IMG/VR virus record: IMGVR_UViG_3300023174_000039
Span: 186,001-250,000 of that record
DNA length: 64,000 nucleotides
Strand: one strand, 5' to 3'
The notes under the pieces are model-generated. The model was not told the origin of the DNA, did not search any database, and was given only the letters and a program-made list of their open reading frames with translations. Shown piece by piece: positions 30,948 through 47,540 of this stretch (position 1 is the first letter of the stretch; every line of letters starts with the position of its first letter). The position numbers and the translations under genes are program-made.

Positions 30948-31022
30948 CTGGCCATAGTATAATGGATAATACAGTAGCCTTCTAAGCTATCAATCTAGGT
31001 TCGATTCCTAGTGGCCGGACCA
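30948..31022 (+). tRNA. tRNA-Arg(TCT)
   Basis: GTAGC-ctTCTaa-GCTAT; TTCGA T-loop; CCA. Confidence 0.92.
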
Positions 31023-31056
31023 AGCTCTGTTAAATAACAGACACTAGGAGAGCACT

Positions 31057-31218: not shown

Positions 31219-31225
31219 CGCACAA

Positions 31226-31309
31226 GCGAGTGTGGGGGAATAGGTAGACCCAGCAGACTTAAAATCTGCCGCGTAATGCGTACCGGTTCGATTCCGGTCA
31301 CTCGTACCA
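31226..31309 (+). tRNA. tRNA-Leu(TAA)
   Basis: GCAGA-ctTAAaa-TCTGC; variable arm; CCA. Confidence 0.93.
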
Positions 31310-31318
31310 TTTTATATC

Positions 31319-31876
31319 ATGACCAAGATAAACAGTAGCCCCGATCGACACACCTTTCAAAAAGAAGGTTATGTTAAACGCTGTGAGGAACAAGGCAAGT
31401 TGCCTAATCCTGACTATGTTGAAATGTACAAAACCTGGCGTGAACAAGATGCGGCAAATCTTGTGGATCCCGAGTGGCAAAACAACAACATGGAGTACGA
31501 CCTGCGTAGTACCAAATGGATCTGCGACAAAGTCAAGGCCAGCGACAGCTATGCTCAAAATCTGTATGCAGCCATGTGCAACATGCAATTTGTAAAAAAC
31601 GAAGTATGGCCTTTGCTCAAGGACCAACGCTGGAGTGCCAGTTGGCGCAGTGCTGGAGGCATTGTGGCTGACATGCATGAACAAGGTGACTATATTGACT
31701 GGTACTGTTCGGGCATTGGTGGCATGATGGGAGGCGGTAGTGAGTCCAGTCCAGCAACAGAAGCAGCCTTGCTGGCCAGAAAAAACTATGTGCCAGAGGG
31801 CACTGTCACTGATGAGATCCGAGCAGACTTATTTCAACTGGGATGGATTCCAAAAGAGTGGGACAGTGATGAGTGA
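31319..31876 (+). CDS. Conserved phage hypothetical protein
   Basis: YAQNLYAAMCN...WSASWRSAGGIVADM...YIDWYCSG. Confidence 0.8.
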   Translation: MTKINSSPDRHTFQKEGYVKRCEEQGKLPNPDYVEMYKTWREQDAANLVDPEWQNNNMEYDLRSTKWICDKVKASDSYAQNLYAAMCNMQFVKNEVWPLLKDQRWSASWRSAGGIVADMHEQGDYIDWYCSGIGGMMGGGSESSPATEAALLARKNYVPEGTVTDEIRADLFQLGWIPKEWDSDE

Positions 31877-32507
31877 CCATACCTATTATAAAAAACTCAA
31901 CTTGCCGGCTAACCCGTTAAAGGACAGCCGAGCGGTGTCTCAGATGTCGATCACTGGTGTTTATGACATAGTAGAACCCCATGCGATTCTAACAGATGAA
32001 ATACTTTCTATCTTTGACAGTCTTGAGTTGCGTGTGAAAATGGTTGCATTGTTTGGTCGTATGGACGGTACTTCTACCAAACATGATAGACTGATACATG
32101 CTGACCTTTACAAAAACAATGCTGATGTGCGTGGATGGTCAAAACTGGTAGCCGGCGTGAATTGGGAGATCGAAGGGTCGCACAATGTTTTTTATTGGTA
32201 TGACATGTCAAAACTTGACGAGCACTGGCCGCCTGTAGTGGGATCAGGTACATCAAAGTATGATTTGTTGAATGGCATACACTACGGACAACGTGGCAAT
32301 CACGGAGTTTATCCCGAGCAGGCAGTGGTACTAGAACACACCACCATTGACGGTCCCACACTAGTGAGAACTGACATTCCACACTCGACATTGTATCACA
32401 ATCCCAACACATACCGAGTGGGGGTCAGTGTTAGATTTTTTGAAGAAGACTTTGATCACAATTGGGAAACAGTATTGGCAAAGTTTCAACCAGTGTTTCT
32501 CAAATAA
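31869..32507 (+). CDS. Hypothetical protein
   Basis: Likely start MSDHTYY at 31869, overlapping the upstream stop. Confidence 0.68.
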   Translation: MSDHTYYKKLNLPANPLKDSRAVSQMSITGVYDIVEPHAILTDEILSIFDSLELRVKMVALFGRMDGTSTKHDRLIHADLYKNNADVRGWSKLVAGVNWEIEGSHNVFYWYDMSKLDEHWPPVVGSGTSKYDLLNGIHYGQRGNHGVYPEQAVVLEHTTIDGPTLVRTDIPHSTLYHNPNTYRVGVSVRFFEEDFDHNWETVLAKFQPVFLK

Positions 32508-32510
32508 ATA

Positions 32511-32580
32511 AGAGTTAAGACTGTATGAAGTTGACAGAAAAGGATTCAAGACCCGGGGGCAGTTCCCGGCAGGTCCACCA
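32511..32580 (+). ncRNA. ssrA: Permuted tmRNA, acceptor (3') piece; 5' end approximate
   Basis: GATTCAA-GAC-CCGGG-GGCAGTT-CCCGG-CAGGTCC-ACCA gives the T arm and 3' acceptor strand. TAAATA promoter at 32505-10. Confidence 0.9.
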
Positions 32581-32603
32581 TAAGGAGATTGAATAAATAC
32601 TAG

Positions 32604-32909
32604 ATGCGAATAAAAGAACTGACTGAATCATTTAACAAGTGCTATGATATGGCATGTAAAATGTATGATTACGCAAAGGCTAAAAATTTGCATCCTAAAC
32701 TAATACAAGTAGCAGATTATAAAGGCGATGGTTCCGGTGCTGATAAACGCTGGCAAAAACTACCGCAAAGAGTGTGGCAACATTATGTCACAGTAATCGG
32801 CAATAAAGTCTACGATCCAACTGCTAAACAGTTTGGTCCTGACAACGATACTGAATATAGTTTAGAAAGATTAGATGCTGACTGGGGACAACAGTATCTA
32901 ATTAAATAA
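32604..32909 (+). CDS. 101-aa protein encoded inside the tmRNA intervening segment; possible Cys-His-Asp (papain/transglutaminase-like) fold
   Basis: KCYDMA...QHYVTVIGNKVYDPTAKQF; TAAGGAG at 32581 and TAAATA at 32594-99. Confidence 0.75.
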   Translation: MRIKELTESFNKCYDMACKMYDYAKAKNLHPKLIQVADYKGDGSGADKRWQKLPQRVWQHYVTVIGNKVYDPTAKQFGPDNDTEYSLERLDADWGQQYLIK

Positions 32910-32922
32910 GTCTTTTTATGAT

Positions 32923-33105
32923 GGGCCTGACATAGATATCGATTGGGTCAAGAGTACGGAAATGGACAGTCCGGCAATGTAGAAGCCGTTAGGGTTGGGG
33001 GAACTTGGCCGAAGACACAAAAACCGTAAATGCAAACGACGAACAGTTCGCTTTAGCCGCCTAAACTCGGCTTAGGGTAGGAAATACCTCGTAACAGAAA
33101 CCACC
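32923..33105 (+). ncRNA. ssrA: Permuted tmRNA, coding (5') piece with tag ANDEQFALAA
   Basis: GGGCCTG pairs with CAGGTCC and includes G3:U70. GTAAAT-GCA resume site. Tag ORF 33032-33064 is GCA AAC GAC GAA CAG TTC GCT TTA GCC GCC TAA. Confidence 0.92.
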
Positions 33106-33133
33106 AAAAAAGGGCACTTTGGTGCCCTTTTTC
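33106..33133 (+). terminator. Intrinsic terminator, bidirectional
   Basis: AAAAAAGGGCAC-tttg-GTGCCCTTTTTT. Confidence 0.9.
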
Positions 33134-33192
33134 TTTGACTTCTTAGTATAAACGCTATATACTAGTTGATATTCATTTTATAAGGAAAAATA

Positions 33193-34086
33193 ATGACAAC
33201 AACAATTACAATCAAGGACAAAGCAGTAAACACAACATATCAAAATGTCACAGGGTTGACAGGTGGCTCAGGCGACGGCGCCGCATTTGATGTTACCAAG
33301 ACCAATGGTGTTTATTCCGTTGTGTTAGACGCATTGGCAGCCAGTGCTGGCCGCAACTATGTGGCAGGTGATACTATTACTCTTGCTGGCACAGCACTGG
33401 GTGGTACAAGTGCCAACAACTTGATCGTCACAGTGGGCACAGTTGGTACTGCCGGTAAGATTGCTACATTTGGTGTAGTGGGCACAGGCCGTGTTGGCGA
33501 TGGCACAGTAGACGTACAAGTTGATGTTACTGGTACCAGTGGCATTGACACTTATACTGTAGGTGGTGCCAGTACAGAGTACACAACAACCAAGACCGCA
33601 AGTGCAGTTACATTGGCCAGTTCACTGGTCAGCAATTTAGAAATTAAACTTGCTGATCACGAGCGTGTGGTGTTCACAGACAAAGCCATTGCATATGATG
33701 CCGCAGGCCGTGCAGGTGATGTATATGCATTGTTGGCAGCCGCACTTGGTGTTAGTGATGTTACTCGAGCCTACGAAGGCATTGGCATCTATCTTGCAGA
33801 TGCAGGTTGGACCAACAAACAATTGGCCACTGCATTGTTGGCCACTGATACATACAAGGCCGACGCCGGTGGTGTCAGTGACGAAACATTCATCAAGCAT
33901 GTTTATAAAAATGTCACAGGTACCACTGCCACAATCGCAGATGTTACTGCATTAACAAACTGGATGACTGCCAACAAGTACAGTCAAGCAGATGTACTGG
34001 TCATTGCCAGCGAATTGCCAGCATTTGAAACAGCAATTGGCCTGGTTGGATTGGCAACAACTGGCATTGAATATACTCCTGTATAA
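33193..34086 (+). CDS. S-layer/RTX-associated-like protein with a C-terminal DUF4214-like domain
   Basis: Thr/Gly/Ala/Val-rich beta region, then DHERVVFTDKAIAYDAAGRAGDVYALL...SDETFIKHVYKNV. Own promoter TTGACT 33136/TATACT 33159 and TAAGGA SD. Confidence 0.72.
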   Translation: MTTTITIKDKAVNTTYQNVTGLTGGSGDGAAFDVTKTNGVYSVVLDALAASAGRNYVAGDTITLAGTALGGTSANNLIVTVGTVGTAGKIATFGVVGTGRVGDGTVDVQVDVTGTSGIDTYTVGGASTEYTTTKTASAVTLASSLVSNLEIKLADHERVVFTDKAIAYDAAGRAGDVYALLAAALGVSDVTRAYEGIGIYLADAGWTNKQLATALLATDTYKADAGGVSDETFIKHVYKNVTGTTATIADVTALTNWMTANKYSQADVLVIASELPAFETAIGLVGLATTGIEYTPV

Positions 34087-34102
34087 TACAACCGGCCCAG
34101 AC

Positions 34103-34129
34103 AAAAAGGCTGTTTTCACAGCCTTTTTT
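34103..34129 (+). terminator. Intrinsic terminator
   Basis: AAAAAGGCTGT-tttc-ACAGCCTTTTT. Confidence 0.9.
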
Positions 34130-34202
34130 GTTGATTAAATGTAAACATCGCTATATAATATAGATTGACTACCAAGTCAATTTAAACAAGGAAATTTAAA
34201 AA

Positions 34203-34742
34203 ATGAAAAAATTTGCATTCGCATCACTCTTGGCTTTGGCCTCTTTCGCTTCTTCTGCACAGTATGTGTCAGTTGATGTGGACCATGTAAAGACCAGTCG
34301 TGGTCAGGAAAGTTCTGCACAGTACATCCGTGCTGGCAAAACCATCAGTGGCATTGACTACGGTCTCCAAAGCCGCACAGGTGTTGGCAACAAAGGTGGC
34401 ATGTTCAACAGCCTAGAAGTCACAGCTGGCAGCAAACTGGGTTCTTTCGCGCCGTTCGTGGGCGTGGGCTATGACAATGGCTTTAACGGTTCACCTGCTG
34501 GTTCATACACATATGGCTTGTTGGGCGTAACAACTGGTGCCAAGGTTGGTCCAGGTTTTGCATTTGGTGGTGTCAAGACTCGACTGGGTTCTAGTGCCAA
34601 AGTAGAAACAAAACAAACAGTGGCGTTTGGTACTTACAGTTTACCCATTGCCAAGAACCTTGCACTCAACGTGAATGCAAGCAAGAGCTACCAAGACATC
34701 AAAGAAACAGCTTATGGTGTTGGCCTAGCGTTTGGGTTTTAA
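34203..34742 (+). CDS. Small outer-membrane beta-barrel (porin-like) protein
   Basis: Sec signal MKKFAFASLLALASFASSA; alternating beta strands; C-terminal YGVGLAFGF fits a BAM signal ending in Phe. Confidence 0.8.
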   Translation: MKKFAFASLLALASFASSAQYVSVDVDHVKTSRGQESSAQYIRAGKTISGIDYGLQSRTGVGNKGGMFNSLEVTAGSKLGSFAPFVGVGYDNGFNGSPAGSYTYGLLGVTTGAKVGPGFAFGGVKTRLGSSAKVETKQTVAFGTYSLPIAKNLALNVNASKSYQDIKETAYGVGLAFGF

Positions 34743-34768
34743 ATGTAATACTTAATAGTTACATTTAC

Positions 34769-34795
34769 AAAAAACCCGCACTAGGCGGGTTTTTT
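34769..34795 (+). terminator. Intrinsic terminator
   Basis: AAAAAACCCGC-actag-GCGGGTTTTTT. Confidence 0.9.
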
Positions 34796-34803
34796 ATTGG
34801 CGG

Positions 34804-34930
34804 TTGACTGAATATTCTGAATTTGCTACAATAGAAACAAGTTAAGAAATACAGCAAAGTTTGCAAAGCCCTTATAAAGAAAAAGGACTTTGCAAAACAA
34901 GTTGACAAGTAAATCACAAGATGTTATACT
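34804..34930 (+). promoter_or_regulatory. Tandem sigma70 promoters of the main tRNA/ncRNA operon
   Basis: TTGACT 34804/TACAAT 34827 and TTGACA 34902/TATACT 34925, both with 17-nt spacers. Confidence 0.8.
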
Positions 34931-35017
34931 AGAGACTAGTTAGGAAATAGTAGATCGAGACTGTTTCAAGAGTTCGTTAAAAATTCAATTTTGTATAGTA
35001 CTCGGATCCAATCCGGG

Positions 35018-35260
35018 CACTATATGTAAGCACATTGGGTTACCGCCCCAGTAGGTAATTTGACAAGAGATCAATCTGTGGCCGCACAGACTCTTCCAAG
35101 TTACATGAAAGATGGAAACGAAGCCGCAAGGTGGATACTGTATAATCGCGCTGGACCAGGTAGGCCTGTAATGTGTTTGACAAACAAGTCCGTGGACGAC
35201 ACGGTAGGGCAGAAAAAACTGCGATCTTTGTCCGACATCCTGATGTGTTTTCATATAGTG
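35018..35260 (+). ncRNA. Structured spacer RNA A
   Basis: Terminal helix CACTATATG/CATATAGTG plus AAGCACATT/GATGTGTTT; internal hairpins such as TCTGTG-gccg-CACAGA. Confidence 0.6.
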
Positions 35261-35267
35261 ATTTTTT

Positions 35268-35343
35268 GGTCTTAAAGTGTTCATGGACGCACGATGGCTT
35301 GTCACGCCATAAGAGTGGGGATCGTTACCCCCTAAGACCGCCA
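35268..35343 (+). tRNA. tRNA-Asp(GTC)
   Basis: ATGGC-ttGTCac-GCCAT; atypical T-loop ATCGTTA; CCA. Confidence 0.88.
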
Positions 35344-35349
35344 ACATTT

Positions 35350-35412
35350 GAGAGCCACTACGCCTGGATACTTCCCTCGCAAGAGGCACTAGGTCCTGCA
35401 ACCGTGGCTCTC
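35350..35412 (+). ncRNA. Small structured spacer B
   Basis: GAGAGCCAC/GTGGCTCTC 9-bp closing helix; CCTC-gcaa-GAGG hairpin. Confidence 0.5.
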
Positions 35413-35420
35413 CCTTATTT

Positions 35421-35496
35421 GCTCGGTTCATCTAGCGGTCTAGGATAGTGCCCTTTCACGGCATTCACACGGGTTCGAATCCCGTACCGAGCTCCA
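35421..35496 (+). tRNA. tRNA-Glu(TTC)
   Basis: GTGCC-ctTTCac-GGCAT; CCA. Confidence 0.93.
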
Positions 35497-35501
35497 CACA
35501 T

Positions 35502-35586
35502 GGAGATGCCGCCGCAATGGTGTGGCAGGGGACTGTAACTCCTCCGACTTCGGTCACGATAGGTTCGATCCCTATCATCTCCACCA
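35502..35586 (+). tRNA. tRNA-Tyr(GTA)
   Basis: ctGTAac loop; variable arm GAC-ttcg-GTC; CCA. Confidence 0.88.
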
Positions 35587-35590
35587 GAAC

Positions 35591-35778
35591 GTTCCGGGTG
35601 TCTCCGGATAGTCAGACCCTGACGATGAGAAGTAGTGTGACAACTACGGGTGGTAGTCTTCAAACCCAAAGGCCGCTAGCAATGCGAGAACGGTCCCTGT
35701 CGGGAAGCGGGTGGAAGGAGTATGTGATGGATACGATAGCGTCGTATCTTGATACTCTACAATTACCGCCGGGGGATG
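35591..35778 (+). ncRNA. GC-rich structured spacer RNA C
   Basis: Hairpins TCCGG/CCGGA, GTCAG/TGAC and GTAGT/ACTAC; nested GCGGGT..GGAGTAT..GATACGA/TCGTATC..ATACTCT..ACCGC. Confidence 0.6.
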
Positions 35779-35791
35779 CAGAGCATGTTTG

Positions 35792-35949
35792 TTTTTATAG
35801 TCAAGCATCGATAAAGGTATCGTGACAGGACGCTGTCACTATTCGGGCCTAACTGTGCGAGGAACAGGTCCTGACATAACTGCCATTCGCTTGTCAGAGC
35901 TAGCTACTTTGTTGACAAATCGGCATCTCTCGGTGCTTGACTATAAAAA
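35792..35949 (+). ncRNA. Structured spacer RNA D
   Basis: 20-bp terminal helix TTTTTATAGTCAAGCATCGA/TCGGTGCTTGACTATAAAAA with one G-U pair. Confidence 0.65.
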
Positions 35950-35952
35950 TAC

Positions 35953-36030
35953 GCACAGGTGGCAGAGTGGTCCAATGCACGGGATTGCAAATCCTGAAAG
36001 CCGTGAGTTCAAATCTCACCCTGTGCTCCA
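35953..36030 (+). tRNA. tRNA-Cys(GCA)
   Basis: ttGCAaa loop; U discriminator; CCA. Confidence 0.9.
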
Positions 36031-36034
36031 GTTT

Positions 36035-36228
36035 TTATATTGATAACAGTGTGTTAAAAACTCTTTGACCAAGGGCCCAACTGCTAGGGAATTATTGATC
36101 CAAAAACCGCTGAGCGGACGAAAGTTGCGGCGGACTGCTAGTCACAGTCACACATGTTTTTGGAAGGATGCTGGTGTAGCAATACAGCAGGGACCTTTAA
36201 ACACACAGCAGTATTGTTATCAATATAA
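36035..36228 (+). ncRNA. Structured spacer RNA E
   Basis: 14-bp perfect helix TTATATTGATAACA/TGTTATCAATATAA, then GTGTGTTAAA/TTTAAACACAC. Confidence 0.65.
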
Positions 36229-36235
36229 GTACTAC

Positions 36236-36310
36236 CGCGGGGTGGAGAAGTAGTAACTCATCAGGCTCATAACCTGAAGATCGGCGGTGCGAATCCGTCC
36301 CCCGCATCCA
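36236..36310 (+). tRNA. Initiator-like tRNA-Met(CAT)
   Basis: C1:A72 mismatch; CGCGGGG 5' end; TCAGG-ctCATaa-CCTGA. Confidence 0.85.
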
Positions 36311-36326
36311 ATTTTACCATTTGTGG

Positions 36327-36355
36327 TTGACTTTCAATCATAAATAAACTACAAT
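36327..36355 (+). promoter_or_regulatory. Sigma70 promoter with nested TAAATA
   Basis: TTGACT 36327-32, 17 nt spacer, TACAAT 36350-55; TAAATA at 36341-46. Confidence 0.75.
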
Positions 36356-36365
36356 AGAAACTAAC

Positions 36366-36479
36366 ATGAAAACACAAAACTATTCATTTGCTAAGCCATC
36401 CATGTTTGTCCAGCCTTCAGCCTGGACGCATGCGAACGGTCGCGTGAATAGCATTCCAGGAGATCCGGGGTCCGTGTAA
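36366..36479 (+). CDS. Putative 37-aa leader peptide
   Basis: MKTQNYSFAKPSMFVQPSAWTHANGRVNSIPGDPGSV; starts about 10 nt after the -10 box and precedes the terminator/antiterminator. Confidence 0.55.
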   Translation: MKTQNYSFAKPSMFVQPSAWTHANGRVNSIPGDPGSV

Positions 36480-36504
36480 AGTACATTAGTATTCTACTCA
36501 AAGG

Positions 36505-36538
36505 ACCCTGGAACTAAACACTCCAGGGTTTTTCTTTT
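36505..36538 (+). terminator. Intrinsic terminator with an overlapping antiterminator
   Basis: ACCCTGGA/TCCAGGGT plus TTTTCTTTT; alternative pairing GGGGTCC 36467-73 with GGACCCT 36503-09. Confidence 0.82.
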
Positions 36539-36629
36539 AGTGCAATGGCAACGAGAGCCGGCATCACTCAAAACTGCAAATGGGCGGCCTGTAGGATGGA
36601 ACACTATTTGTAGTGTGAAAAATTACAGC

Positions 36630-36685
36630 GTATTAAAGCATTCTTTAAGAACAGGCAGCCTAAGTATTTTAGAGTGCTTTAATAC
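36630..36685 (+). ncRNA. Long hairpin spacer F
   Basis: 15-bp stem GTATTAAAGCATTCT/AGAGTGCTTTAATAC. Confidence 0.55.
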
Positions 36686-36708
36686 ACACATTCGTAAGAG
36701 TGTGTCGG

Positions 36709-36782
36709 GTATCTCTGGTGTAATGGCAGCACCGCGGTCTCCAAAACCGTCAGTCAAGGTTCGAGTCCTTGGAGGTACGCCA
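36709..36782 (+). tRNA. tRNA-Trp(CCA)
   Basis: GCGGT-ctCCAaa-ACCGT; CCA end. Confidence 0.92.
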
Positions 36783-36787
36783 CACAT

Positions 36788-36861
36788 GGGCTGGTAGTTA
36801 AATGGGATAACGGTGGCTTTGCAAGCCTCAGTTGGGAGTTCGATTCTCCCTCGGTCCACCA
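36788..36861 (+). tRNA. tRNA-Ala(TGC)
   Basis: ttTGCaa loop; G3:U70. Confidence 0.92.
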
Positions 36862-36869
36862 AATTAAAT

Positions 36870-36898
36870 TTGACACAACCGTGTGTCTGCTATATAAT
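36870..36898 (+). promoter_or_regulatory. Sigma70 promoter
   Basis: TTGACA-17-TATAAT. Confidence 0.82.
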
Positions 36899-36905
36899 AG
36901 CATGT

Positions 36906-36995
36906 CGAGAGCGGGCAGGACGGTAATGCAGCGGATTGCTAATCCGTAGACCGTAGTAATACGGTCACTGGGTTCGACTCCCAGGCTCTCGGCCA
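36906..36995 (+). tRNA. tRNA-Ser(GCT)
   Basis: GCGGA-ttGCTaa-TCCGT; long variable arm. Confidence 0.92.
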
Positions 36996-37006
36996 CATCA
37001 ATCAAT

Positions 37007-37082
37007 TCCCTAGTAGCTCAGTCGGTAGAGTAGCAGACTGTTAATCTGTTGGTCACACGTTCGAACCGTGTCTGGGGAGCCA
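37007..37082 (+). tRNA. tRNA-Asn(GTT)
   Basis: GCAGA-ctGTTaa-TCTGT. Confidence 0.93.
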
Positions 37083-37087
37083 AACAA

Positions 37088-37163
37088 GCCCTTATAGCTC
37101 AGCTGGTAGAGCAACTGATTTGTAATCAGTAGGTCCCGTGTTCGAATCATGGTGGGGGCACCA
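37088..37163 (+). tRNA. tRNA-Thr(TGT)
   Basis: ACTGA-ttTGTaa-TCAGT. Confidence 0.93.
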
Positions 37164-37166
37164 ATC

Positions 37167-37242
37167 GCTCTCATAGCTCTAGTGGTAGAGCATACCCTTG
37201 GTAAGGGTAAGGTCACGTGTTCGAATCACGTTGAGAGCACCA
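37167..37242 (+). tRNA. tRNA-Thr(GGT)
   Basis: TACCC-ttGGTaa-GGGTA. Confidence 0.93.
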
Positions 37243-37251
37243 ATTCATTTC

Positions 37252-37328
37252 AGCTTCATAGCTCAGTTGGTTAGAGCACCGTGTTGATAACGCGGGGGTC
37301 CTGTGTTCGAGTCACAGTGAAGCTACCA
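37252..37328 (+). tRNA. tRNA-Ile(GAT)
   Basis: CCGTG-ttGATaa-CGCGG. Confidence 0.93.
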
Positions 37329-37379
37329 AATTTTTAAAGGAGAGTCCCTATGGACAGTGATAAGAGTGGGAAGATTTGT

Positions 37380-37455
37380 GGGACGTTAGCTCAGTTGGTA
37401 GAGCAGTAGACTTTTAATCTATTGGTCATTGGTTCAAATCCAATACGTCCTACCA
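37380..37455 (+). tRNA. tRNA-Lys(TTT)
   Basis: GTAGA-ctTTTaa-TCTAT. Confidence 0.93.
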
Positions 37456-37524
37456 TATAAAAACACACTTGGTATGCCCATAGCATACAGAGACATCAGA
37501 AACGTGAGTGTGTTTCTATATGGT
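37452..37524 (+). ncRNA. Structured spacer G linking tRNA-Lys and tRNA-His
   Basis: ACCATATA/TATATGGT plus AAACACACT/AGTGTGTTT. Confidence 0.6.
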
Positions 37525-37598
37525 GCTTGTCGTCAAGCGGTTAAGACCTCGGATTGTGATTCCGATATACGTGGGTTCGAATCCCATCAAGCACCCCA
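37522..37598 (+). tRNA. tRNA-His(GTG)
   Basis: G-1:C73; TCGGA-ttGTGat-TCCGA. Confidence 0.93.
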
Positions 37599-37599
37599 T

Positions 37600-37674
37600 G
37601 GATGTATAGCACAGCGGTAGTGCATCTCCTTCATACGGAGCAGGTCAGTAGTTCAAATCTACTTACATCCACCA
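37600..37674 (+). tRNA. tRNA with CAT anticodon, probably elongator Met
   Basis: CTCC-ttCATac-GGAG; fully paired acceptor stem; CCA. Confidence 0.82.
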
Positions 37675-37685
37675 TAACATTTTGT

Positions 37686-37759
37686 TGGGGGTTAGTTAAA
37701 TGGTATAACATCGGATTTTGATTCCGAGATCACAAGTTCGATTCTTGTACCCTCTGCCA
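37686..37759 (+). tRNA. tRNA-Gln(TTG)
   Basis: TCGGA-ttTTGat-TCCGA; unpaired 1:72. Confidence 0.9.
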
Positions 37760-37764
37760 CATAT

Positions 37765-37841
37765 CGGTCCTTAACTCAATTGGATAGAGTGCCAGTCTTC
37801 GAAACTGGAAGTTGGGAGTTCGACTCTCTCAGGACCGGCCA
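37765..37841 (+). tRNA. tRNA-Arg(TCG)
   Basis: CCAGT-ctTCGaa-ACTGG. Confidence 0.92.
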
Positions 37842-37880
37842 GTTTTTAACCTTGTATAATACTAGCCTATAAATATTTCC

Positions 37881-38642
37881 ATGAAGAAAGCACTTATACT
37901 TGGATGTAGTCATGCCGCTGGTTCAGAAATGATTGATGAGCCAGAAATTGATTTGTTAAACTATGGCAAAGACTACTATGGATACTGTATGAGTTATCCC
38001 TCACAGTTGGCACAATTGTTGGGGTACCATCCCGTAAATCATGCTATCCCTGGTGGTAGCAATGATGCAATGTTTAGAATATTTGAATCGTTTGTCAACC
38101 CTTACAAGAACTTTGAAAAGCCTGACATTGTGTTTGTATGTTGGACCGGTGGCGAACGTACCGAGGTATGGGACTTTGAAGAAGGCAACTGGATTGGCCT
38201 TGCTGGCGGTAAAACTAATTTTACAAAAACAATTCCTGATAGTGTTATACGGGAAGGGAAAATTATTCCTGAACCTATTATTAACGCCGATAACATTGTT
38301 ACATATCAAAAACAATGGATCACTCATCATGCTGATCGCTGGTGGGGTCGATTGAACAAGTTAAAAAACATACTGGCACTGAACACCATGGCAGCTCAAG
38401 AGAAGATCCCGGTTATTAATCTTGATAGTTTTGGTGCAGTGCAAGAATACACATTTCCCGACACAGTATATCGTCCCTTGGGACAAACTGAGTTTTGTAA
38501 CTGGGCGGTCGAGCGTGGATTCAACAACACCAAGTCGGGACATTACTTTTTGCAAGCACACAGAAGTTTTGCAAACTTCATTGCCAAAAAAGTTGATCCA
38601 AAGTATCATGCAGATAACATCGGAAAGATCATAACAGAATAA
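37881..38642 (+). CDS. SGNH/GDSL-like protein inside the tRNA array
   Basis: LILGCSH, NHAIPGGSN, SGHYFLQAH; TATAAATA ends 5 nt before the ATG. Confidence 0.7.
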   Translation: MKKALILGCSHAAGSEMIDEPEIDLLNYGKDYYGYCMSYPSQLAQLLGYHPVNHAIPGGSNDAMFRIFESFVNPYKNFEKPDIVFVCWTGGERTEVWDFEEGNWIGLAGGKTNFTKTIPDSVIREGKIIPEPIINADNIVTYQKQWITHHADRWWGRLNKLKNILALNTMAAQEKIPVINLDSFGAVQEYTFPDTVYRPLGQTEFCNWAVERGFNNTKSGHYFLQAHRSFANFIAKKVDPKYHADNIGKIITE

Positions 38643-38646
38643 TAAT

Positions 38647-38720
38647 GCGGGGCTCGTATAGTGGTAATACCTTAGCCTTCCAAGCTAAAGCGAGGGGTTC
38701 GATTCCCCTGCCCCGCTCCA
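38647..38720 (+). tRNA. tRNA-Gly(TCC)
   Basis: TTAGC-ctTCCaa-GCTAA. Confidence 0.93.
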
Positions 38721-38726
38721 CTTATT

Positions 38727-38802
38727 GCGCGGTTAACTCAGTCGGTAGAGTTCTTGCCTTACACGCAGGCTGTCGGCGGTTCGAGCCCGTCACCGCGCAC
38801 CA
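38727..38802 (+). tRNA. tRNA-Val(TAC)
   Basis: CTTGC-ctTACac-GCAGG. Confidence 0.93.
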
Positions 38803-38808
38803 CACATT

Positions 38809-38885
38809 CGGAGTGTAGCACAGCCTGGTAGTGCGCCTGGTTTGGGACCAGGAGGTCGTAGGTTCGAATCCTACTATTCCGACCA
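38809..38885 (+). tRNA. tRNA-Pro(TGG)
   Basis: CCTGG-ttTGGga-CCAGG. Confidence 0.93.
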
Positions 38886-38892
38886 CCTTTTT

Positions 38893-38984
38893 GGAAGATG
38901 ATGCAGTGGGGTTGGTCCCGCGACTGGCCTTGAAAACCAGGTTCTCTTAACAGGGATGGGGTTCGACTCCTCCGTCTTCCGCCA
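38893..38984 (+). tRNA. tRNA-Ser(TGA)
   Basis: ctTGAaa loop; long variable arm; G discriminator. Confidence 0.88.
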
Positions 38985-39028
38985 AATTAATTGACACCGC
39001 AGATGTTGTGTGTTATTATGATAGTTAG

Positions 39029-39113
39029 GCCCAGGTGGCGAAATTGGTAGACGCACCAGATTTAGGTTCTGGCGTAGAAATATGTGTCGGTTCGAGTCCG
39101 ACCCTGGGCACCA
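39029..39113 (+). tRNA. tRNA-Leu(TAG)
   Basis: CCAGA-ttTAGgt-TCTGG; variable arm. Confidence 0.93.
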
Positions 39114-42514: not shown

Positions 42515-43013
42515 CATGCCAGGGAAAATCGATCACATCAAAACAGCTTGCCTGGACATACACTTGGAAACTGGTCACATGATTGACTTCAAAGAGTGGG
42601 TGCCATCTGTTCAACAATGCCGTGTAAAGGTCATGTTGAATGACACAGTGTTGCATCACGGCGACATTGGTAGCCCTATAAAAATAGCACACAATTTTTT
42701 AGATCTCGACAACGGGCAGTACAATCTACAAATTGAAATTGAAGAGATTGCACATGGATTTGATTACAACGGGTTATGGGCATCGCCCATGCTACACATA
42801 CAAGGTGTATGGATAGAAAATCTTAATTTAGGGCTGGCATTTGAAGAATACGGAAAATGTCATTATGCCACACATCCAGATATAACTGTTCCATCAAACT
42901 TTATGGGCAACATTGGTGTTCAGAGTCTTGAATTTACAACTCCAATCTACGCATGGTTGTTGTCAAATGACCAGTACGAAGATGCCACATATTATTCCCC
43001 GGTGTTAGCATGA
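42453..43013 (+). CDS. Hypothetical protein; start uncertain
   Basis: Fills the gap to the heptose cluster; ATGA overlap downstream. Confidence 0.6.
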   Translation: MAYIVLPTTSTEKARQKIMFSMPGKIDHIKTACLDIHLETGHMIDFKEWVPSVQQCRVKVMLNDTVLHHGDIGSPIKIAHNFLDLDNGQYNLQIEIEEIAHGFDYNGLWASPMLHIQGVWIENLNLGLAFEEYGKCHYATHPDITVPSNFMGNIGVQSLEFTTPIYAWLLSNDQYEDATYYSPVLA

Positions 43014-43405
43014 AACAAATTTTTGTTAACGGAACATTTGACATTCTACATCCAGGTCATGTACAATTGCTAAATTACGCTCGTGGTCTAGGAGATAGCT
43101 TGATTGTTGCAATCGATAGTGACCGTCGTGTACGTGAACTCAAAGGCAAGGATCGGCCAATCAACTCAGAATCTGATCGAAAATTCATGTTAGAAAATCT
43201 ACGTAGCATAGATAGCGTTTGGGTATTTGATAGTGACCAGGAACTTGAAGATATTTGTAGACTGTACAATCCCGTTATGGTCAAAGGATCAGACTACCGT
43301 GGTCGGCCTGTAATAGGGCAACAATATTGCAAAGAGATAATTTTTTATGATAGAATTGAACCATACTCAACCACAAGAGCAATTCAGGATATTGGTAATA
43401 GGTGA
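43010..43405 (+). CDS. Heptose-1-phosphate nucleotidyltransferase (HldC / RfaE domain II)
   Basis: NGTFDILHPGH, DSDRRVRELKGKDRPIN, KGSDY, YSTT. Confidence 0.9.
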   Translation: MKQIFVNGTFDILHPGHVQLLNYARGLGDSLIVAIDSDRRVRELKGKDRPINSESDRKFMLENLRSIDSVWVFDSDQELEDICRLYNPVMVKGSDYRGRPVIGQQYCKEIIFYDRIEPYSTTRAIQDIGNR

Positions 43406-44105
43406 TGTTTGCGTGGACATTTACCAGTACGGCGTAGTTGATCGTATCAGTCCCGAGGCGCCTGTGCCGGTGTTTGTACCCACAAGAGAAGAAAGCACTA
43501 ATGGCATGGCTGCAAATGTAGCGGCTAATTTGGTTGCTCTTGGATGCGAAGTACTGGTGGCCAGTGGGCCGCCAGGGTCAAAGACACGACTGATTGATGA
43601 ACGTAGCCGGCAACAAATTGTTCGTATTGATAACGACTATATCAATGAGCCGTATCCATTAACCGACATGGATCTCAGTGTGTGCAGTGCTATAGTTGTT
43701 AGTGATTACAACAAGGGCAATGTAACCTATGAACTGATTGAAAATCTGCGCAAGACATACAAAGGGCCAATCTTTGTAGACACAAAGAAAACAGACCTTG
43801 CAAGACTAGCAGGTTGCATTGTGAAGATCAACAATAAAGAATTCAACGATGCCAAATCTGTGTGTGATGAATTGATTGTCACCCACGGGCGTAACGGTGC
43901 AGTATACAAAGGTCAAACATACCCTGCTGTGGAAATAGCAGTAACAGATGTATGCGGTGCTGGCGACACGTTCCTTGCTGCCTTATGCTATGAATATCTA
44001 AAATCCAACAACATGGATCTTGCAATAGAATTTGCAATTCGAGCCAGCGCCGTTACTGTACAACATATAGGTGTGTACGCCCCCACATTAGAGGAAATCA
44101 AATGA
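43347..44105 (+). CDS. PfkB-family heptose-7-phosphate kinase (HldA / RfaE domain I)
   Basis: VIGDVCVD..YG.VDRISPEAPVPV; SDYNKG; DVCGAGDTF. Confidence 0.9.
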   Translation: MIELNHTQPQEQFRILVIGDVCVDIYQYGVVDRISPEAPVPVFVPTREESTNGMAANVAANLVALGCEVLVASGPPGSKTRLIDERSRQQIVRIDNDYINEPYPLTDMDLSVCSAIVVSDYNKGNVTYELIENLRKTYKGPIFVDTKKTDLARLAGCIVKINNKEFNDAKSVCDELIVTHGRNGAVYKGQTYPAVEIAVTDVCGAGDTFLAALCYEYLKSNNMDLAIEFAIRASAVTVQHIGVYAPTLEEIK

Positions 44106-44458
44106 GACTAGAAGGCTTTGTAGAAAAAGGATGGGGCTCAGAACATATCTGGGCCACTAACGACTTGTACTGTGGCAAACTTATGAAGTTTAACGAAGGT
44201 GCTCGATTCAGCATGCATTTCCATGCTGAAAAAGATGAAACATGGTACGTGTTAGATGGGTTGTTTCAGGTACGTTTTATAGAAACTCAAGATGCCAGCC
44301 AACATGATGCAATCTTAAAACCAGGTGCCACATGGCGCAACAGACCATTACAGCCACATCAATTGGTTTGTATAGAAGCTGGCACTATCATCGAAGTCAG
44401 TACACCAGATTCAGTAGAAGACAACTATCGTGTGGGCAAAGGAGACAGTCAAAAATGA
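44102..44458 (+). CDS. Cupin protein (mannose-6-P isomerase-like)
   Basis: KGWGSE, SMHFHAEKDETW, EVSTPD. Confidence 0.82.
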   Translation: MRLEGFVEKGWGSEHIWATNDLYCGKLMKFNEGARFSMHFHAEKDETWYVLDGLFQVRFIETQDASQHDAILKPGATWRNRPLQPHQLVCIEAGTIIEVSTPDSVEDNYRVGKGDSQK

Positions 44459-45231
44459 GAATTTTACTTACTGGCCATAAAGGCTTTATTGGATCAAACA
44501 TGTTGAAAGCCCTTGAAGGGCATGATGTTAGAACATATGAGTGGGGCGAGAATGAAGACAAGCTAGATACCAGAGGCCAAGATGTGTGTATTCACATTGG
44601 TGGCATATCCAGCACAACCGAACGAGATGTAGACAAAGTCATGCGACAAAATTATGATTTCAGTTGTCGCTTGCTGGATCGTTGCATGAATACAGGCACA
44701 CATTTTCAATATTCCAGTAGTGCCAGCGTGTACGGGTTGAACCAGGAGTTTCGTGAAGATTCTCCTGTGGATCCACGCACACCATACGCATGGTCAAAAT
44801 ACATGTTTGAACGATATGCACTCAAACGTCAGGAGTTTGGCGATAGTGCTGGTTACCGTATACAAGGTTTTAGATATTTCAATGTGTATGGTCCTAGAGA
44901 AGATCACAAAGGATCTCAAGCGAGCCCTTATCATCAATTTGAAAAACAAGCTAGAGAAACAGGACGCATACGTGTGTTTGAAGGCAGTAGAGACTATCAA
45001 AGAGACTTTGTGCCTGTGGATCAAATTATCCAAACTCATTTGGCATTTTTAAATGTCAAACAATCGGGTGTGTTCAATGTGGGCACTGGGCGTACCCAAA
45101 GCTTCTACGAAATTGCTGAACAATTTGGTGTGCCCATAGAAGAAATCCCCATGCCCGAACATCTAAAAACCAGTTACCAAATCTACACTTGTGCCGATAT
45201 GACTCGTACAAATCGAGCATTGGCAAGTTGA
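44455..45231 (+). CDS. hldD: ADP-L-glycero-D-manno-heptose-6-epimerase-like SDR
   Basis: TGHKGFIG, YSSSASVYG, YAWSK, FRYFNVYGPREDHKG, RDFV. Confidence 0.85.
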   Translation: MRILLTGHKGFIGSNMLKALEGHDVRTYEWGENEDKLDTRGQDVCIHIGGISSTTERDVDKVMRQNYDFSCRLLDRCMNTGTHFQYSSSASVYGLNQEFREDSPVDPRTPYAWSKYMFERYALKRQEFGDSAGYRIQGFRYFNVYGPREDHKGSQASPYHQFEKQARETGRIRVFEGSRDYQRDFVPVDQIIQTHLAFLNVKQSGVFNVGTGRTQSFYEIAEQFGVPIEEIPMPEHLKTSYQIYTCADMTRTNRALAS

Positions 45232-45275
45232 CAATATAGTTGTATTATTGTATAATAAGTCAAGAGAGGAACAAT

Positions 45276-45587
45276 GTGAGTAACGAACTAGCTAAATTCA
45301 TAAATTCGCGGCGTCGGCATAAAACTGATGTCAAGGTTGCTAGGCAAGTGAAAATTGCCAAAGCACATGGTCTTGGTTTTTACGACAAAGCAATCAGAGA
45401 ACCACATCGTTTAGCAAAGCATCATGCTATGGATTGCGGTCAACCCGGTTGTATGATGTGCGGTAATCCTCGCAAGACTCACAAGGACCGACTCACAGCT
45501 CAAGAAAAGCGTTTGTTCCAGGACTTGGAGCAGGTCACAGACAGACATTCAAATGGTTTAACAACGAAAGACAATGATGAAAATTGA
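45276..45587 (+). CDS. Basic conserved phage protein with a CxxPxCxxC Zn-binding-like motif
   Basis: GTG start after GAGAGGA; CGQPGCMMCGNPR; sigma70 promoter TTGACA 45228/TATAAT 45251. Confidence 0.75.
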   Translation: MSNELAKFINSRRRHKTDVKVARQVKIAKAHGLGFYDKAIREPHRLAKHHAMDCGQPGCMMCGNPRKTHKDRLTAQEKRLFQDLEQVTDRHSNGLTTKDNDEN

Positions 45588-45843
45588 ACATGATGCACGT
45601 GGTAGAACTGCCGGACTCACTAGCGAACATGCTGTTGAAGCATTAGGCAATCGATATGATTTGGTTCTAGTTGCCGCACAAAGAACAAGAGAACTACGTC
45701 GCGGACATGCCCCAAAGATTGTTACCAAGTACGGTCCAATGGTCACTGCTATATTAGAAATTGAAGAAGGCCTTGTGGGCAACGAGTACTTGCTCAAAGA
45801 AACTTTAGAAGATCGTCATCACCAAAAGCATCCGCGCCGTTAA
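45574..45843 (+). CDS. rpoZ: RNA polymerase omega subunit homologue
   Basis: AVEALGNRYDLVLVAAQRTRELRRG...VTAILEIEEG matches the omega core. Confidence 0.82.
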   Translation: MMKIEHDARGRTAGLTSEHAVEALGNRYDLVLVAAQRTRELRRGHAPKIVTKYGPMVTAILEIEEGLVGNEYLLKETLEDRHHQKHPRR

Positions 45844-46619: not shown

Positions 46620-47540
46620 ATGAAAAATACACTCATAGCATTCGTGCTGACAGTATGCACTTCATTGTGCTTTTCGCAACCACGTGTGACACTTGTTGTA
46701 GGTGGTCCACCTGGCGGTCCTTCAGATGCATTTGGCCGTGCTACTGCAGATTATCTAAAAAGAGTCAACGACAGCAATATTGTTGTAAGCAACAAAGCAG
46801 GAGCCAGCGGCTTAATAGCATTGAGATCAACACTCGAGGATCCAGGATTCAACGTACTGGTCGCCAGCACAGGTCCTTTTGTGTTCAATCGAGTCATGAT
46901 TGACAAACTGGACATAGAGCCTTTACAGGAATTTGATGTGTTTGGTCCTGTTGTTAGAACTCCTATGGCCTTGGTCACACAAGGCAATGGCAAAATTAAA
47001 ACCATTGCCGATTGGAAAAAGCAAGACCACGTGGTGTGCGGAGTAACCAATCAAAGTGGAGCACTATGGGCCAGACTGTTGTTTAAAAAGATTGGCGTCC
47101 CATCAACCATAATCATGTACAAAGGGTCTCCACAGCTGATTCAAGATATATTGTCCAAAACACTGGACTGCGGGTTAGATTCATATCCCACATACACTTC
47201 GTTGCATACCAGCGAGCATATAAAAATTGTAGCAGTTGCCGACACACAACGTCCCAAAGATCATGCCACCATTCCCACAGTTAAAGAGCTAGGAGTAGAC
47301 TTTGAAGCATACAGTTGGTTTGGTATTGGTATACCCAACAAGTATCGTGGCACCGACGAATACAATAAGATTGCACGAGCATTGACTCAGATTCATTTGG
47401 ATTCTGAGTTTACAAACAAAATGAACCATCAAGGCTACAGAGCCGGTCGTATCGTCGACAACTACAATCGCACACTGCAACAGGACTACGAGTACTGGAA
47501 TTCTGTCAGACAGCAATTTAACCTAGAGCGCACACCGTGA
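46620..47540 (+). CDS. tctC: Tripartite tricarboxylate transporter substrate-binding protein (Bug/TctC)
   Basis: Signal peptide; VVGGPPGGPSDAFGR, NKAGASG, YKGSPQ, PTVKELG. Confidence 0.85.
   Translation: MKNTLIAFVLTVCTSLCFSQPRVTLVVGGPPGGPSDAFGRATADYLKRVNDSNIVVSNKAGASGLIALRSTLEDPGFNVLVASTGPFVFNRVMIDKLDIEPLQEFDVFGPVVRTPMALVTQGNGKIKTIADWKKQDHVVCGVTNQSGALWARLLFKKIGVPSTIIMYKGSPQLIQDILSKTLDCGLDSYPTYTSLHTSEHIKIVAVADTQRPKDHATIPTVKELGVDFEAYSWFGIGIPNKYRGTDEYNKIARALTQIHLDSEFTNKMNHQGYRAGRIVDNYNRTLQQDYEYWNSVRQQFNLERTP

What the first reader, a model, noticed from the sequence alone, without database searches (positions are those of the whole stretch)
45574..45843. Phage RNA polymerase omega subunit lacking the MARVT ppGpp-contact N-terminus
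Seen: a clear omega core, but the N-terminus reads MKIEHDARGRTAGLTSE instead of MARVT. Known: in proteobacterial RNAP, omega residues 2-5 help form ppGpp site 1. Inference: swapping in the phage omega could blunt the stringent response on host RNAP, complementing the tRNA, tmRNA and MazG-like genes.
Basis: partly seen in the sequence, partly recalled or inferred. Interest (0 to 1): 0.62.

Follow-up and report, generated by a model that had tools for sequence, protein, structure and literature searches.

The report
Phage-encoded RNA polymerase omega subunit
A 331-kb freshwater T4-like phage carries its own copy of omega, the smallest subunit of bacterial RNA polymerase, with the end that normally touches the starvation signal ppGpp rebuilt; it belongs to a large family of phage omegas that we found described in no paper.

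Summary
Window 45574-45843 (+) encodes an 89-aa RNA polymerase omega: Pfam and TIGRFAM scores are above cut-off, and the predicted fold matches solved omega chains.

The MARVT segment is not deleted. It is internal and changed. Twelve residues precede A13-G14-L15-T16-S17, so E. coli Ala2 and Thr5 are kept, Arg3 is Gly, and the free N-terminus is displaced.

The gene sits in a 331.6-kb phage (CheckV 95%) with a T4-type capsid and no detectable RNA polymerase of its own, so omega must act on host polymerase.

It is one of at least 241 IMG/VR viral contigs encoding related omegas. These separate from 28 sampled cellular omegas (support 100/87) and evolve under strong purifying selection (dN/dS 0.04-0.2).

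The family splits by N-terminus:
- canonical MARI(T/S)S;
- M(S/P)RI;
- MxxSRARYTS;
- extension + TAGLTS, the window's type.

All classes share a basic C-terminal tail.

The ppGpp reading is therefore plausible for this lineage only. It cannot explain the whole family and was not tested.

A perfect sigma-70 consensus promoter suggests early expression. No paper describing phage omegas was found.

The parts
45228..45256 (+). Sigma-70-type promoter-like site, TTGACA-17 nt-TATAAT (12 of 12), directly upstream of the small gene and omega
   Evidence: One search found 5 sites against 1.9 expected, and this one is perfect. A match of 10-12 of 12 at the same place occurs in 19 of 23 distinct class-D relatives. 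This is a consensus match only, and no transcript data exist.
45276..45587 (+). Gene for a basic Cys/His-rich protein of about 103 aa (phrog_4499, function unknown). It has a GTG start after a GAGAGGAA ribosome-binding site, and its stop overlaps the omega start by 14 nt.
   Evidence: phrog_4499 at E 8e-10. The start was set by conservation. H44, C54, C59 and C62 are invariant in 23 relatives. It lies immediately upstream of omega in 36 fetched class-D loci. In class A/C phages a homologue lies 23-28 kb away in three records and about 140 kb away in a fourth.
45574..45843 (+). rpoZ-like gene: phage-encoded RNA polymerase omega subunit, 89 aa plus stop
   Evidence: dN/dS is 0.04-0.2 against close relatives.
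45574..45609 (+). Codons 1-12 (MMKIEHDARGRT): N-terminal extension with no counterpart in cellular omegas
   Evidence: Cellular matches start at about residue 13. Extensions of 8-18 aa occur in 53 of 54 distinct class-D sequences, with T at -2, R/K at -3 and an acidic residue at -8..-3 in 51 of 54. The segment is low-confidence coil in the AF2 model.
45610..45624 (+). Codons 13-17 (AGLTS): counterpart of E. coli omega residues 2-6 (ARVTV), the ppGpp site-1 contact segment, with Arg3 replaced by Gly14
   Evidence: Alignment. G14, L15, T16 and S17 are at least 90% conserved in alignment A1. Class D covers 131 of 209 classified sequences, a set that includes the 31 cellular ones.
45637..45777 (+). 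Omega core (residues 22-68): helices with GNRYDLVLVAAQRTREL and the LEIEEG motif
   Evidence: Pfam match. Invariant columns G25, R37, R39, E40, L41, E62, I63, E64. Helices at 17-24, 27-42 and 55-64 with pLDDT about 90.
45796..45840 (+). Basic C-terminal tail (residues 75-89, ends HHQKHPRR)
   Evidence: Tails of the viral omegas carry net charge 0 to +6, with medians of +3 to +4 in every class. The sampled cellular omegas have median -1 and range -20..+1.

Best explanation
The gene encodes a functional, phage-adapted omega subunit. It is probably made early, from a consensus sigma-70 promoter, together with the small Cys/His protein upstream. It probably takes the omega site on beta' of the host RNA polymerase, either on omega-free or newly assembled enzyme or by exchange.

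The T4-like phage has no polymerase of its own, so this is the enzyme that transcribes the phage genome.

In this lineage the segment that in proteobacterial omega supplies Ala2 and Arg3 to the 5'-diphosphate of ppGpp is rebuilt. Arg3 is Gly, and a 12-residue extension removes the free N-terminus. The expected result is a polymerase whose ppGpp site 1 is weakened or lost. That would lessen ppGpp-dependent inhibition and pausing on phage DNA in nutrient-poor freshwater hosts.

Status of each step:
- Shown: identity as omega, the phage context, conservation, purifying selection, and the exact residue changes.
- Inferred: binding to host beta', early expression, and the effect on ppGpp.

Rough odds: omega homologue 0.97; acts on host RNAP 0.8; weakens site 1 and this is its selected role 0.35-0.4.
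For: Identity:
- HMM scores are above the curated cut-offs.
- The PDB sequence search and the fold search return only omega chains.

Phage context:
- The record is a 331,654-bp virus, 95% complete, with T4-type Gp23 at 324 bits.
- No beta', beta or T7-type RNAP was found.

Functional constraint:
- dN/dS is 0.04-0.2 with dS of 0.35-2.06, about 1 or more in 9 of 10 pairs.
- 97 protein clusters and 241 IMG/VR contigs encode relatives.
- Viral omegas are separated from 28 sampled cellular omegas by a branch with support 100/87. The best cellular identity in 401 genomes is 52%.

Site-1 segment:
- G14 aligns with R3, and GLTS is nearly invariant.
- Omega Ala2 and Arg3 make most 5'-diphosphate contacts, and site 1 is needed for ppGpp-stimulated pausing (PMC13192712).
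- The MAR motif predicts site 1 (PMC6912228).

Expression: a 12/12 sigma-70 promoter, conserved in relatives.

Host lead: a beta-proteobacterial-type tmRNA tag and a GHAPKI stretch shared with Burkholderiales-like omegas. Such hosts would have MAR-type omega.
Against: - Eight of the 80 best viral loci keep a canonical MAR start, and 43 of 80 keep Arg3. The family is therefore retained for some other or broader reason.
- A conserved Arg or Lys three residues before the Gly (37 of 54 extensions) could replace Arg3.
- In E. coli, site 2 with DksA carries most of the response. Loss of omega is mild, and an omega delta2-5 RNAP that also carried three beta' site-1 substitutions still bound ppGpp about 2-fold worse (PMC7676912).
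- The host is not identified, so it is not shown that its polymerase has site 1.
- No RNA data exist.
- Nothing here shows that the phage protein can displace resident omega.
Confidence: 0.4

Rival explanations
1. General omega function. The phage supplies omega to keep host RNAP assembled, stable and processive. Alternatively it biases sigma-factor competition towards the holoenzyme that reads phage promoters. Family-wide phage-specific features, such as the basic C-terminal tail, would be the adaptation. The N-terminal change in this lineage would be neutral drift or a secondary adjustment unrelated to ppGpp.
For: - All four N-terminal classes, including canonical MAR, are retained in large T4-like phages of 260-364 kb.
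- The basic C-terminal tail is shared by the viral classes and is absent from sampled cellular omegas.
- Omega-less RNAP changes sigma usage and genome distribution in E. coli and cyanobacteria (PMC5811629, PMC3985657).
- Omega stabilises transcribing RNAP (PMC13192885).
Against: - The TAGLTS block and the residues just before it are among the most conserved in the lineage. That is not expected for a drifting segment.
- The changes fall exactly on the two ppGpp-contact residues.
- RNAP is long-lived, so it is unclear why a phage would need extra ordinary omega.
Confidence: 0.35
2. Adaptor module. The extended N-terminus, the basic tail, or both, of phage omega form a docking site for a phage factor. 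The co-transcribed Cys/His protein upstream is a candidate. Swapping in phage omega would then retarget host RNAP to phage promoters, much as GafA acts through omega in the RcGTA system.
For: - The small gene overlaps or abuts omega in 36 class-D loci, behind a shared consensus promoter.
- Its H/C/C/C pattern is invariant.
- There is a precedent for a regulator that works through omega (PMC9638019).
Against: - Homologues of the small protein exist in class A/C phages, 23-28 kb from omega in three records and about 140 kb away in a fourth. Some class-D loci lack it nearby. The adjacency may be plain synteny.
- No Pfam family was found and no confident fold was obtained.
- There is no positive evidence of contact.
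Confidence: 0.1
3. Non-functional passenger. The gene is a recently captured host rpoZ, or a mis-called ORF, with no role in infection.
For: Jumbo phages carry many host-like genes. Omega is dispensable in E. coli (PMC7676912).
Against: - Strong purifying selection.
- Hundreds of viral relatives form their own group.
- At most 52% identity to sampled cellular omegas.
- Conserved promoter and synteny.
Confidence: 0.03
4. Subunit of a phage-encoded multisubunit RNA polymerase that is too divergent to detect.
For: Some jumbo phages encode very divergent beta/beta'-like proteins (PMC4666361, PMC7598289), and Pfam models can miss them.
Against: - Those polymerases are reported to lack omega and occur in phiKZ- and AR9-like phages, not in phages with a T4-type capsid.
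- No hits to PF00623 or PF00562.
- The omega core is 40-52% identical to proteobacterial omegas, which fits a cellular beta' partner.
Confidence: 0.03

Closest known systems
Proteobacterial RNA polymerase omega subunit (RpoZ; E. coli, Vibrio, Burkholderiales type)
   Same: - Same family by HMM and by fold.
- 40-52% identity over the core.
- GNR(F/Y)DLVLVAA..R.R and EIEEG motifs.
- Same length class, and Ala2 and Thr5 equivalents are kept.
   Different: - Encoded by a phage rather than next to gmk and spoT.
- A 12-aa N-terminal extension.
- Arg3 replaced by an invariant Gly.
- A basic instead of an acidic or neutral C-terminal tail.
Other phage-encoded omegas found here in IMG/VR (classes A, B, C)
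   Same: - Same viral group of omegas, in T4-like jumbo phages of 260-364 kb.
- Usually a few hundred bases to about 4 kb upstream of the same phosphoesterase gene.
- Basic tail.
   Different: - They keep Arg3, and class A keeps the whole MAR start.
- They mostly follow tRNA genes instead of the small Cys/His gene with its own consensus promoter.
Phage proteins that reprogram host RNAP through the ppGpp/DksA route (TraR homologues such as lambda Orf73)
   Same: Small phage- or plasmid-borne proteins that change how host RNAP responds to stringent-type regulation (PMC9239242).
   Different: - Those bind the secondary channel and mimic ppGpp plus DksA at site 2.
- This is a replacement core subunit at site 1 and is not homologous to them.
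GafA-omega control of the RcGTA gene transfer agent
   Same: A phage-like element exploits the omega subunit as the point of control of host RNAP (PMC9638019).
   Different: There the host's own omega is used and the element supplies only the regulator. Here the virus supplies omega itself.

Membership tests
Bacterial RNAP omega subunit (RpoZ, PF01192 / TIGR00690) | Sequence match above the curated family cut-offs | tested here: met
   PF01192 at 42.7 bits (cut-off 26); TIGR00690 at 38.9 bits (cut-off 23.6).
Bacterial RNAP omega subunit (RpoZ, PF01192 / TIGR00690) | Omega fold (helical core as in solved RNAP structures) | tested here: met
   AF2 model with pLDDT 76.8, about 90 in the core. All top Foldseek PDB hits are omega chains, with TM 0.6-0.78 normalised by target.
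Bacterial RNAP omega subunit (RpoZ, PF01192 / TIGR00690) | Binds beta' and is part of the RNAP core | not testable with these tools
   Inferred from homology only.
MAR-type omega that forms ppGpp site 1 (Alpha-, Beta-, Gamma-, Deltaproteobacteria) | Met-Ala-Arg at the very N-terminus | tested here: not met
   Twelve residues precede the Ala. The sequence is ..RTAGLTS. Motif definition from PMC6912228.
MAR-type omega that forms ppGpp site 1 (Alpha-, Beta-, Gamma-, Deltaproteobacteria) | Arg3, which contacts the ppGpp 5'-diphosphate | tested here: not met
   Gly14 aligns with Arg3 and is at least 90% conserved in the lineage. The contact is described in PMC13192712. A nearby Arg11 (-3) is conserved and could compensate.
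MAR-type omega that forms ppGpp site 1 (Alpha-, Beta-, Gamma-, Deltaproteobacteria) | Ala2 and Thr5 equivalents | tested here: met
   A13 and T16.
MAR-type omega that forms ppGpp site 1 (Alpha-, Beta-, Gamma-, Deltaproteobacteria) | Binds ppGpp together with beta' R362, R417 and K615 | not testable with these tools
   Needs biochemistry or a full RNAP model. The host beta' is unknown.
T4-like jumbo phage that depends on host RNAP | T4-type major capsid protein and no polymerase of its own | tested here: met
   Gp23 PF07068 at 324.6 bits. No PF00623, PF00562, PF00940 or Sigma70_r2 hits. Very divergent polymerases cannot be excluded.

The most novel reading that the evidence does not exclude
Phage omega is a Trojan core subunit. 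Its N-terminal extension almost always carries an acidic residue a few positions before the conserved R-T-A-G-L-T-S. In this reading the extension folds into the basic ppGpp pocket of beta' (R362, R417, K615) as a built-in pseudo-ligand. That would lock host RNAP in a state blind to ppGpp, or one that mimics it. Meanwhile the basic tail, the co-expressed Cys/His protein, or both, would redirect the enzyme to phage DNA. The natural series MAR, M(S/P)R, SRARY, RTAGLTS among phage omegas would then be graded solutions to the same problem.
Probability: 0.12. Interest if true: 0.8.

Novelty: new variant of a known kind. Interest (0 to 1): 0.62.

Why it matters
Phages are known to redirect host RNA polymerase with sigma factors, anti-sigma factors, ADP-ribosylation and channel-binding proteins, or to bring a whole polymerase. 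Supplying a replacement for one core subunit is a strategy we found described in no paper among the six full-text searches. A 224-genome comparative review of jumbo phages does not mention omega at all.

Omega is the least understood RNAP subunit, and its best-defined role is forming ppGpp site 1. Hundreds of phage omegas differ precisely at the two ppGpp-contact residues while keeping the core. They give a ready-made natural mutant series for two questions:
- what site 1 does in initiation and in pausing;
- whether escaping the stringent response matters for large phages in nutrient-poor waters.

The finding also warns that omega genes in metagenomes, and in MAGs, can be viral.

Tried and rejected
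- Complex prediction of phage omega with the upstream Cys/His protein gave no verdict (score 0.00, controls not run). It is neither evidence for nor against binding.
- The AF2 model of the small protein had pLDDT 62.8 and pTM 0.28, too poor for a fold search.
- Pfam on its 23 relatives gave only sub-threshold Zn_Tnp_IS91.
- The ESM Atlas gave only unnamed viral clusters.
- tblastn against cultured phages gave one weak hit, in a Pseudomonas jumbo phage.
- PHROGs has no family for this omega.
- Cultured-phage records (INPHARED) gave six hits, all at 46% identity. Two are Salmonella enterica genome records, and the other four, labelled as phage records, carry no annotation. I take them all for bacterial rpoZ, and none is a phage omega of this family.
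- Stringent-response genes sought in the whole phage:
  - RelA_SpoT and HD_4 gave nothing.
  - The DksA/TraR zinc finger gave only 15 bits in a 47-aa frame.
  - The Pfam MazG model gave only 14 bits, although PHROGs and PF01503 identify that ORF as a MazG-like pyrophosphohydrolase.
- tmRNA was not found by ARAGORN or by the gathering-threshold scan, and gave only 19 bits with RF00023. It was found as a permuted tmRNA with laxer filters.
- I considered that the small gene plus class-D omega form an exclusive module. I rejected this as stated, because class A/C phages hold the small gene elsewhere in the genome.
- I considered that class D has a single origin. The 59-column tree needs at least 4 changes, so this is unresolved.
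- The original structural papers on site 1 (Ross 2013, Zuo 2013, Mechold 2013) are not held. The contacts are cited from later papers.
- Taxon names of the sampled cellular genomes are not given by the tool. The 'beta/gamma-proteobacterial' labels rest on my reading of the sequences.
- No RNA sequencing run holds the region.

Full report
**1. What is there**

Window 45574-45843 (+) is an 89-codon ORF that starts ATG-ATG. Four independent tests place it in the omega family:
- Pfam RNA_pol_Rpb6 at 42.7 bits, against a cut-off of 26.
- TIGR00690 rpoZ at 38.9 bits, against a cut-off of 23.6.
- phmmer against all PDB chains returns only RNAP omega subunits, with E. coli at E about 6e-11.
- An AF2 model built on 28 relatives (pLDDT 76.8, about 90 across residues 21-70) has only omega chains as its top Foldseek hits in the PDB, with TM 0.6-0.78.

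PHROGs has no family for it.

**2. The N-terminus**

The phmmer alignment puts Gly14 opposite E. coli Arg3. The correspondences are:

| E. coli omega | Phage omega |
|---|---|
| Ala2 | Ala13 |
| Arg3 | Gly14 |
| Val4 | Leu15 |
| Thr5 | Thr16 |

- In 401 sampled Pseudomonadota genomes, 272 gave a match, and the matches begin at about query residue 13. Residues 1-12 therefore have no cellular counterpart.
- There is no in-frame start codon between codon 2 and the conserved TAGLTS, so the extension is part of the protein.
- Among close relatives the first 16 codons differ mostly at synonymous sites.
- AF2 models residues 1-16 as low-confidence coil.

However, the MARVT segment is remodelled and made internal. 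It is not absent.

**3. Context**

*The phage.*
- The window is part of a 331,654-bp IMG/VR virus record, 95% complete by CheckV.
- It has a T4-type major capsid protein (Gp23, 324.6 bits).
- In the window it has 24 tRNA genes, a permuted tmRNA (74.8 bits, tag ANDEQFALAA) and a MazG-like pyrophosphohydrolase.
- No beta', beta, T7-type RNAP, Sigma70_r2, RelA/SpoT or SpoT-type HD domain was detected.
- T4-like phages transcribe with host RNAP throughout infection (established knowledge). The phage omega therefore has only the host enzyme to act on.

*The local gene unit.*
- A perfect sigma-70 consensus promoter (TTGACA-17-TATAAT, 45228-45256) precedes a gene for a 103-aa basic Cys/His protein (45276-45587; phrog_4499, function unknown).
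- The stop codon of that gene overlaps the omega start.
- A calcineurin-like phosphoesterase (phrog_547) and a TctC-family binding protein follow.
- The same promoter (10-12 of 12) is present in 19 of 23 distinct relatives. This suggests early transcription by unmodified host holoenzyme. It rests on a consensus match only, because no RNA run holds the region.

*Habitat.* The DNA occurs in lake and freshwater metagenomes from at least four studies.

**4. A family of phage omegas**

*Size of the family.*
- The word-based protein search found 96 clusters at 53-94% identity, all metagenomic, and then a drop to 38%.
- A motif scan of IMG/VR found 241 viral contigs encoding a relative. The best 80 were fetched, and several are 260-364 kb.
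- Contexts are syntenic or clearly phage-like.
- Four such records are complete or near-complete T4-like phages. A fifth, of 342 kb, has no Gp23 hit.

*Separation from cellular omegas.*
- In GTDB species genomes the same kind of scan found only five loci.
- The two best lie on small contigs of Bacteroidota MAGs that also carry their own 115-aa omega. One of the two (L014) has the phage neighbours. They are most likely binned phage contigs.
- The best identity to any of the 401 sampled Pseudomonadota genomes is 52%.
- On a 59-column maximum-likelihood tree, the 28 sampled cellular omegas are separated from all viral ones by a branch with support 100/87.
- dN/dS among close relatives is 0.04-0.2.

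This is an old, maintained viral gene family, not a recent capture.

**5. N-terminal classes**

Classes among the 80 viral loci:

| Class | N-terminus | Loci |
|---|---|---|
| A | canonical MARI(T/S)S | 8 |
| B | M(S/P)RI(S/T)S | 6 |
| C | M(T/S)(E/Q)SR(A/V)RY(T/S)S | 29 |
| D (the window's) | 8-18-aa extension, then x-G-L-(T/S)-(S/N) | 36 |
| other | | 1 |

- All 31 sampled cellular omegas start MAR(V/I)T.
- Classes A-C lie nearest the cellular sequences on the tree.
- Class D is not resolved as one clade, since at least 4 changes are needed.
- Within class D, the residue at -2 from the Gly is Thr in 48 of 54 distinct extensions, and the residue at -1 is Ala in 41.
- The residue at -3 is Arg or Lys in 37 of 54, and an acidic residue lies at -8..-3 in 51.
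- Viral omegas of every class have a basic C-terminal tail (net charge 0 to +6, class medians +3 to +4). The sampled cellular tails are neutral to acidic (median -1).

**6. What this means for the ppGpp idea**

In favour:
- In E. coli, site 1 lies between beta' and omega.
- Omega residues 2-5 help to coordinate the phosphates (PMC7676912).
- Ala2 and Arg3 make most of the 5'-diphosphate contacts, and site 1 is required for ppGpp-stimulated pausing (PMC13192712).
- The N-terminal MAR motif is used to predict site 1 (PMC6912228).
- Replacing Arg3 by an invariant Gly and burying Ala2 behind an extension would be expected to weaken the site. A polymerase blind to ppGpp at site 1 could help a 331-kb phage in slow-growing lake bacteria.

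Against:
- Nearly half of the sampled phage omegas keep Arg3, and some keep MAR intact.
- A conserved Arg three residues upstream could stand in for Arg3.
- Loss of omega is mild in E. coli because site 2 with DksA remains.
- An RNAP with omega delta2-5 plus three beta' substitutions still bound ppGpp about 2-fold worse (PMC7676912).
- The host is unknown. The leads to a beta-proteobacterium are:
  - the tmRNA tag together with a partial beta_tmRNA match;
  - a GHAPKI stretch shared with Burkholderiales-like omegas;
  - a TctC/Bug-family gene.

I therefore rate the interpretation as partly supported. It is plausible for this lineage and insufficient for the family.

**7. The neighbour gene**

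- The small Cys/His protein abuts omega in 36 fetched loci, all of class D. H44, C54, C59 and C62 are invariant.
- Homologues lie 23-28 kb from omega in three class A/C phages and about 140 kb away in a fourth. Adjacency is therefore lineage-specific synteny, not an exclusive pairing.
- Fold and family searches were uninformative.

**8. Novelty**

- Six full-text searches found no description of a phage-encoded omega.
- A comparative review of 224 jumbo phages contains no mention of omega, RpoZ or Rpb6.
- Papers on phage multisubunit RNAPs concern beta/beta'-like proteins only (PMC4666361, PMC7598289).
- JGI's automatic annotation already labels several relatives as omega. The gene call itself is therefore not new.
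- What appears unreported is the existence of a viral omega family, its N-terminal classes at the ppGpp contact, and its basic tail.
- It is a new variant of a known kind. Interest is 0.62.

Noticed in passing
window 32519-33064 (+): Permuted (two-piece) tmRNA: RF04321 at 74.8 bits (gathering score 47) with a roughly 300-nt insertion, and a tag reading frame ending ANDEQFALAA. There is also a partial beta_tmRNA match. ARAGORN and the gathering-threshold Rfam scan both missed it. The tag type hints at a beta-proteobacterial host.
   Followed up: partly
window 45276-45587 (+): A basic protein of about 103 aa with invariant H44, C54, C59 and C62 (phrog_4499, function unknown). It is translationally coupled to omega and abuts omega in 36 fetched loci, all class D, while some class-D loci lack it nearby. 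In class A/C phages a homologue sits 23-28 kb away in three records and about 140 kb away in a fourth. No fold or family could be assigned.
   Followed up: partly
window 30868-39113 (+): 24 tRNA genes in 8 kb covering 19 amino acids (all but Phe), with three tRNA-Met(CAT). In many related phages omega lies directly after such tRNA genes.
   Followed up: no
window 43010-45231 (+): Four-gene sugar-nucleotide cluster just upstream: cytidylyltransferase-like, PfkB kinase, cupin, and an NAD-dependent epimerase annotated in cyanophages as ADP-glyceromanno-heptose 6-epimerase. It looks like a phage-borne ADP-heptose pathway.
   Followed up: no
window 46620-47540 (+): TctC/Bug-family periplasmic solute-binding protein (60.7 bits) with a signal-peptide-like N-terminus, encoded by a phage. 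It has no PHROG family. The family is expanded in Burkholderiales, which is a further host hint.
   Followed up: no
window 26299-26892 (+): MazG-like nucleotide pyrophosphohydrolase (phrog_671 at 128 bits; PF01503 at 42.8 bits). The Pfam MazG model itself scores only 14 bits.
   Followed up: partly
L013 (Lentimicrobiaceae MAG, 7-kb contig), L014 and L102 (Haliscomenobacter MAG, contigs C90 and C1): Phage-type omegas sit in Bacteroidota MAGs that also have their own 115-aa omega. L014 carries the same phage neighbours (small Cys/His gene, phosphoesterase). These are probably phage contigs binned into the MAGs, and could be a weak host lead.
   Followed up: partly
G405 (IMG/VR record of L028, 342,865 bp, 99% complete): It carries a class-D omega but has no Gp23 or phrog_4499 match. 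Phage omegas therefore may not be confined to T4-like phages.
   Followed up: no
INPHARED records MG065691.1 and MG065686.1 (Campylobacter phages A11a, A18a), OR845831.1, OR851528.1: These 'phage' records hold an rpoZ match with the same identity, coverage and score as Salmonella enterica genome records. That looks like bacterial sequence in the deposited records.
   Followed up: no
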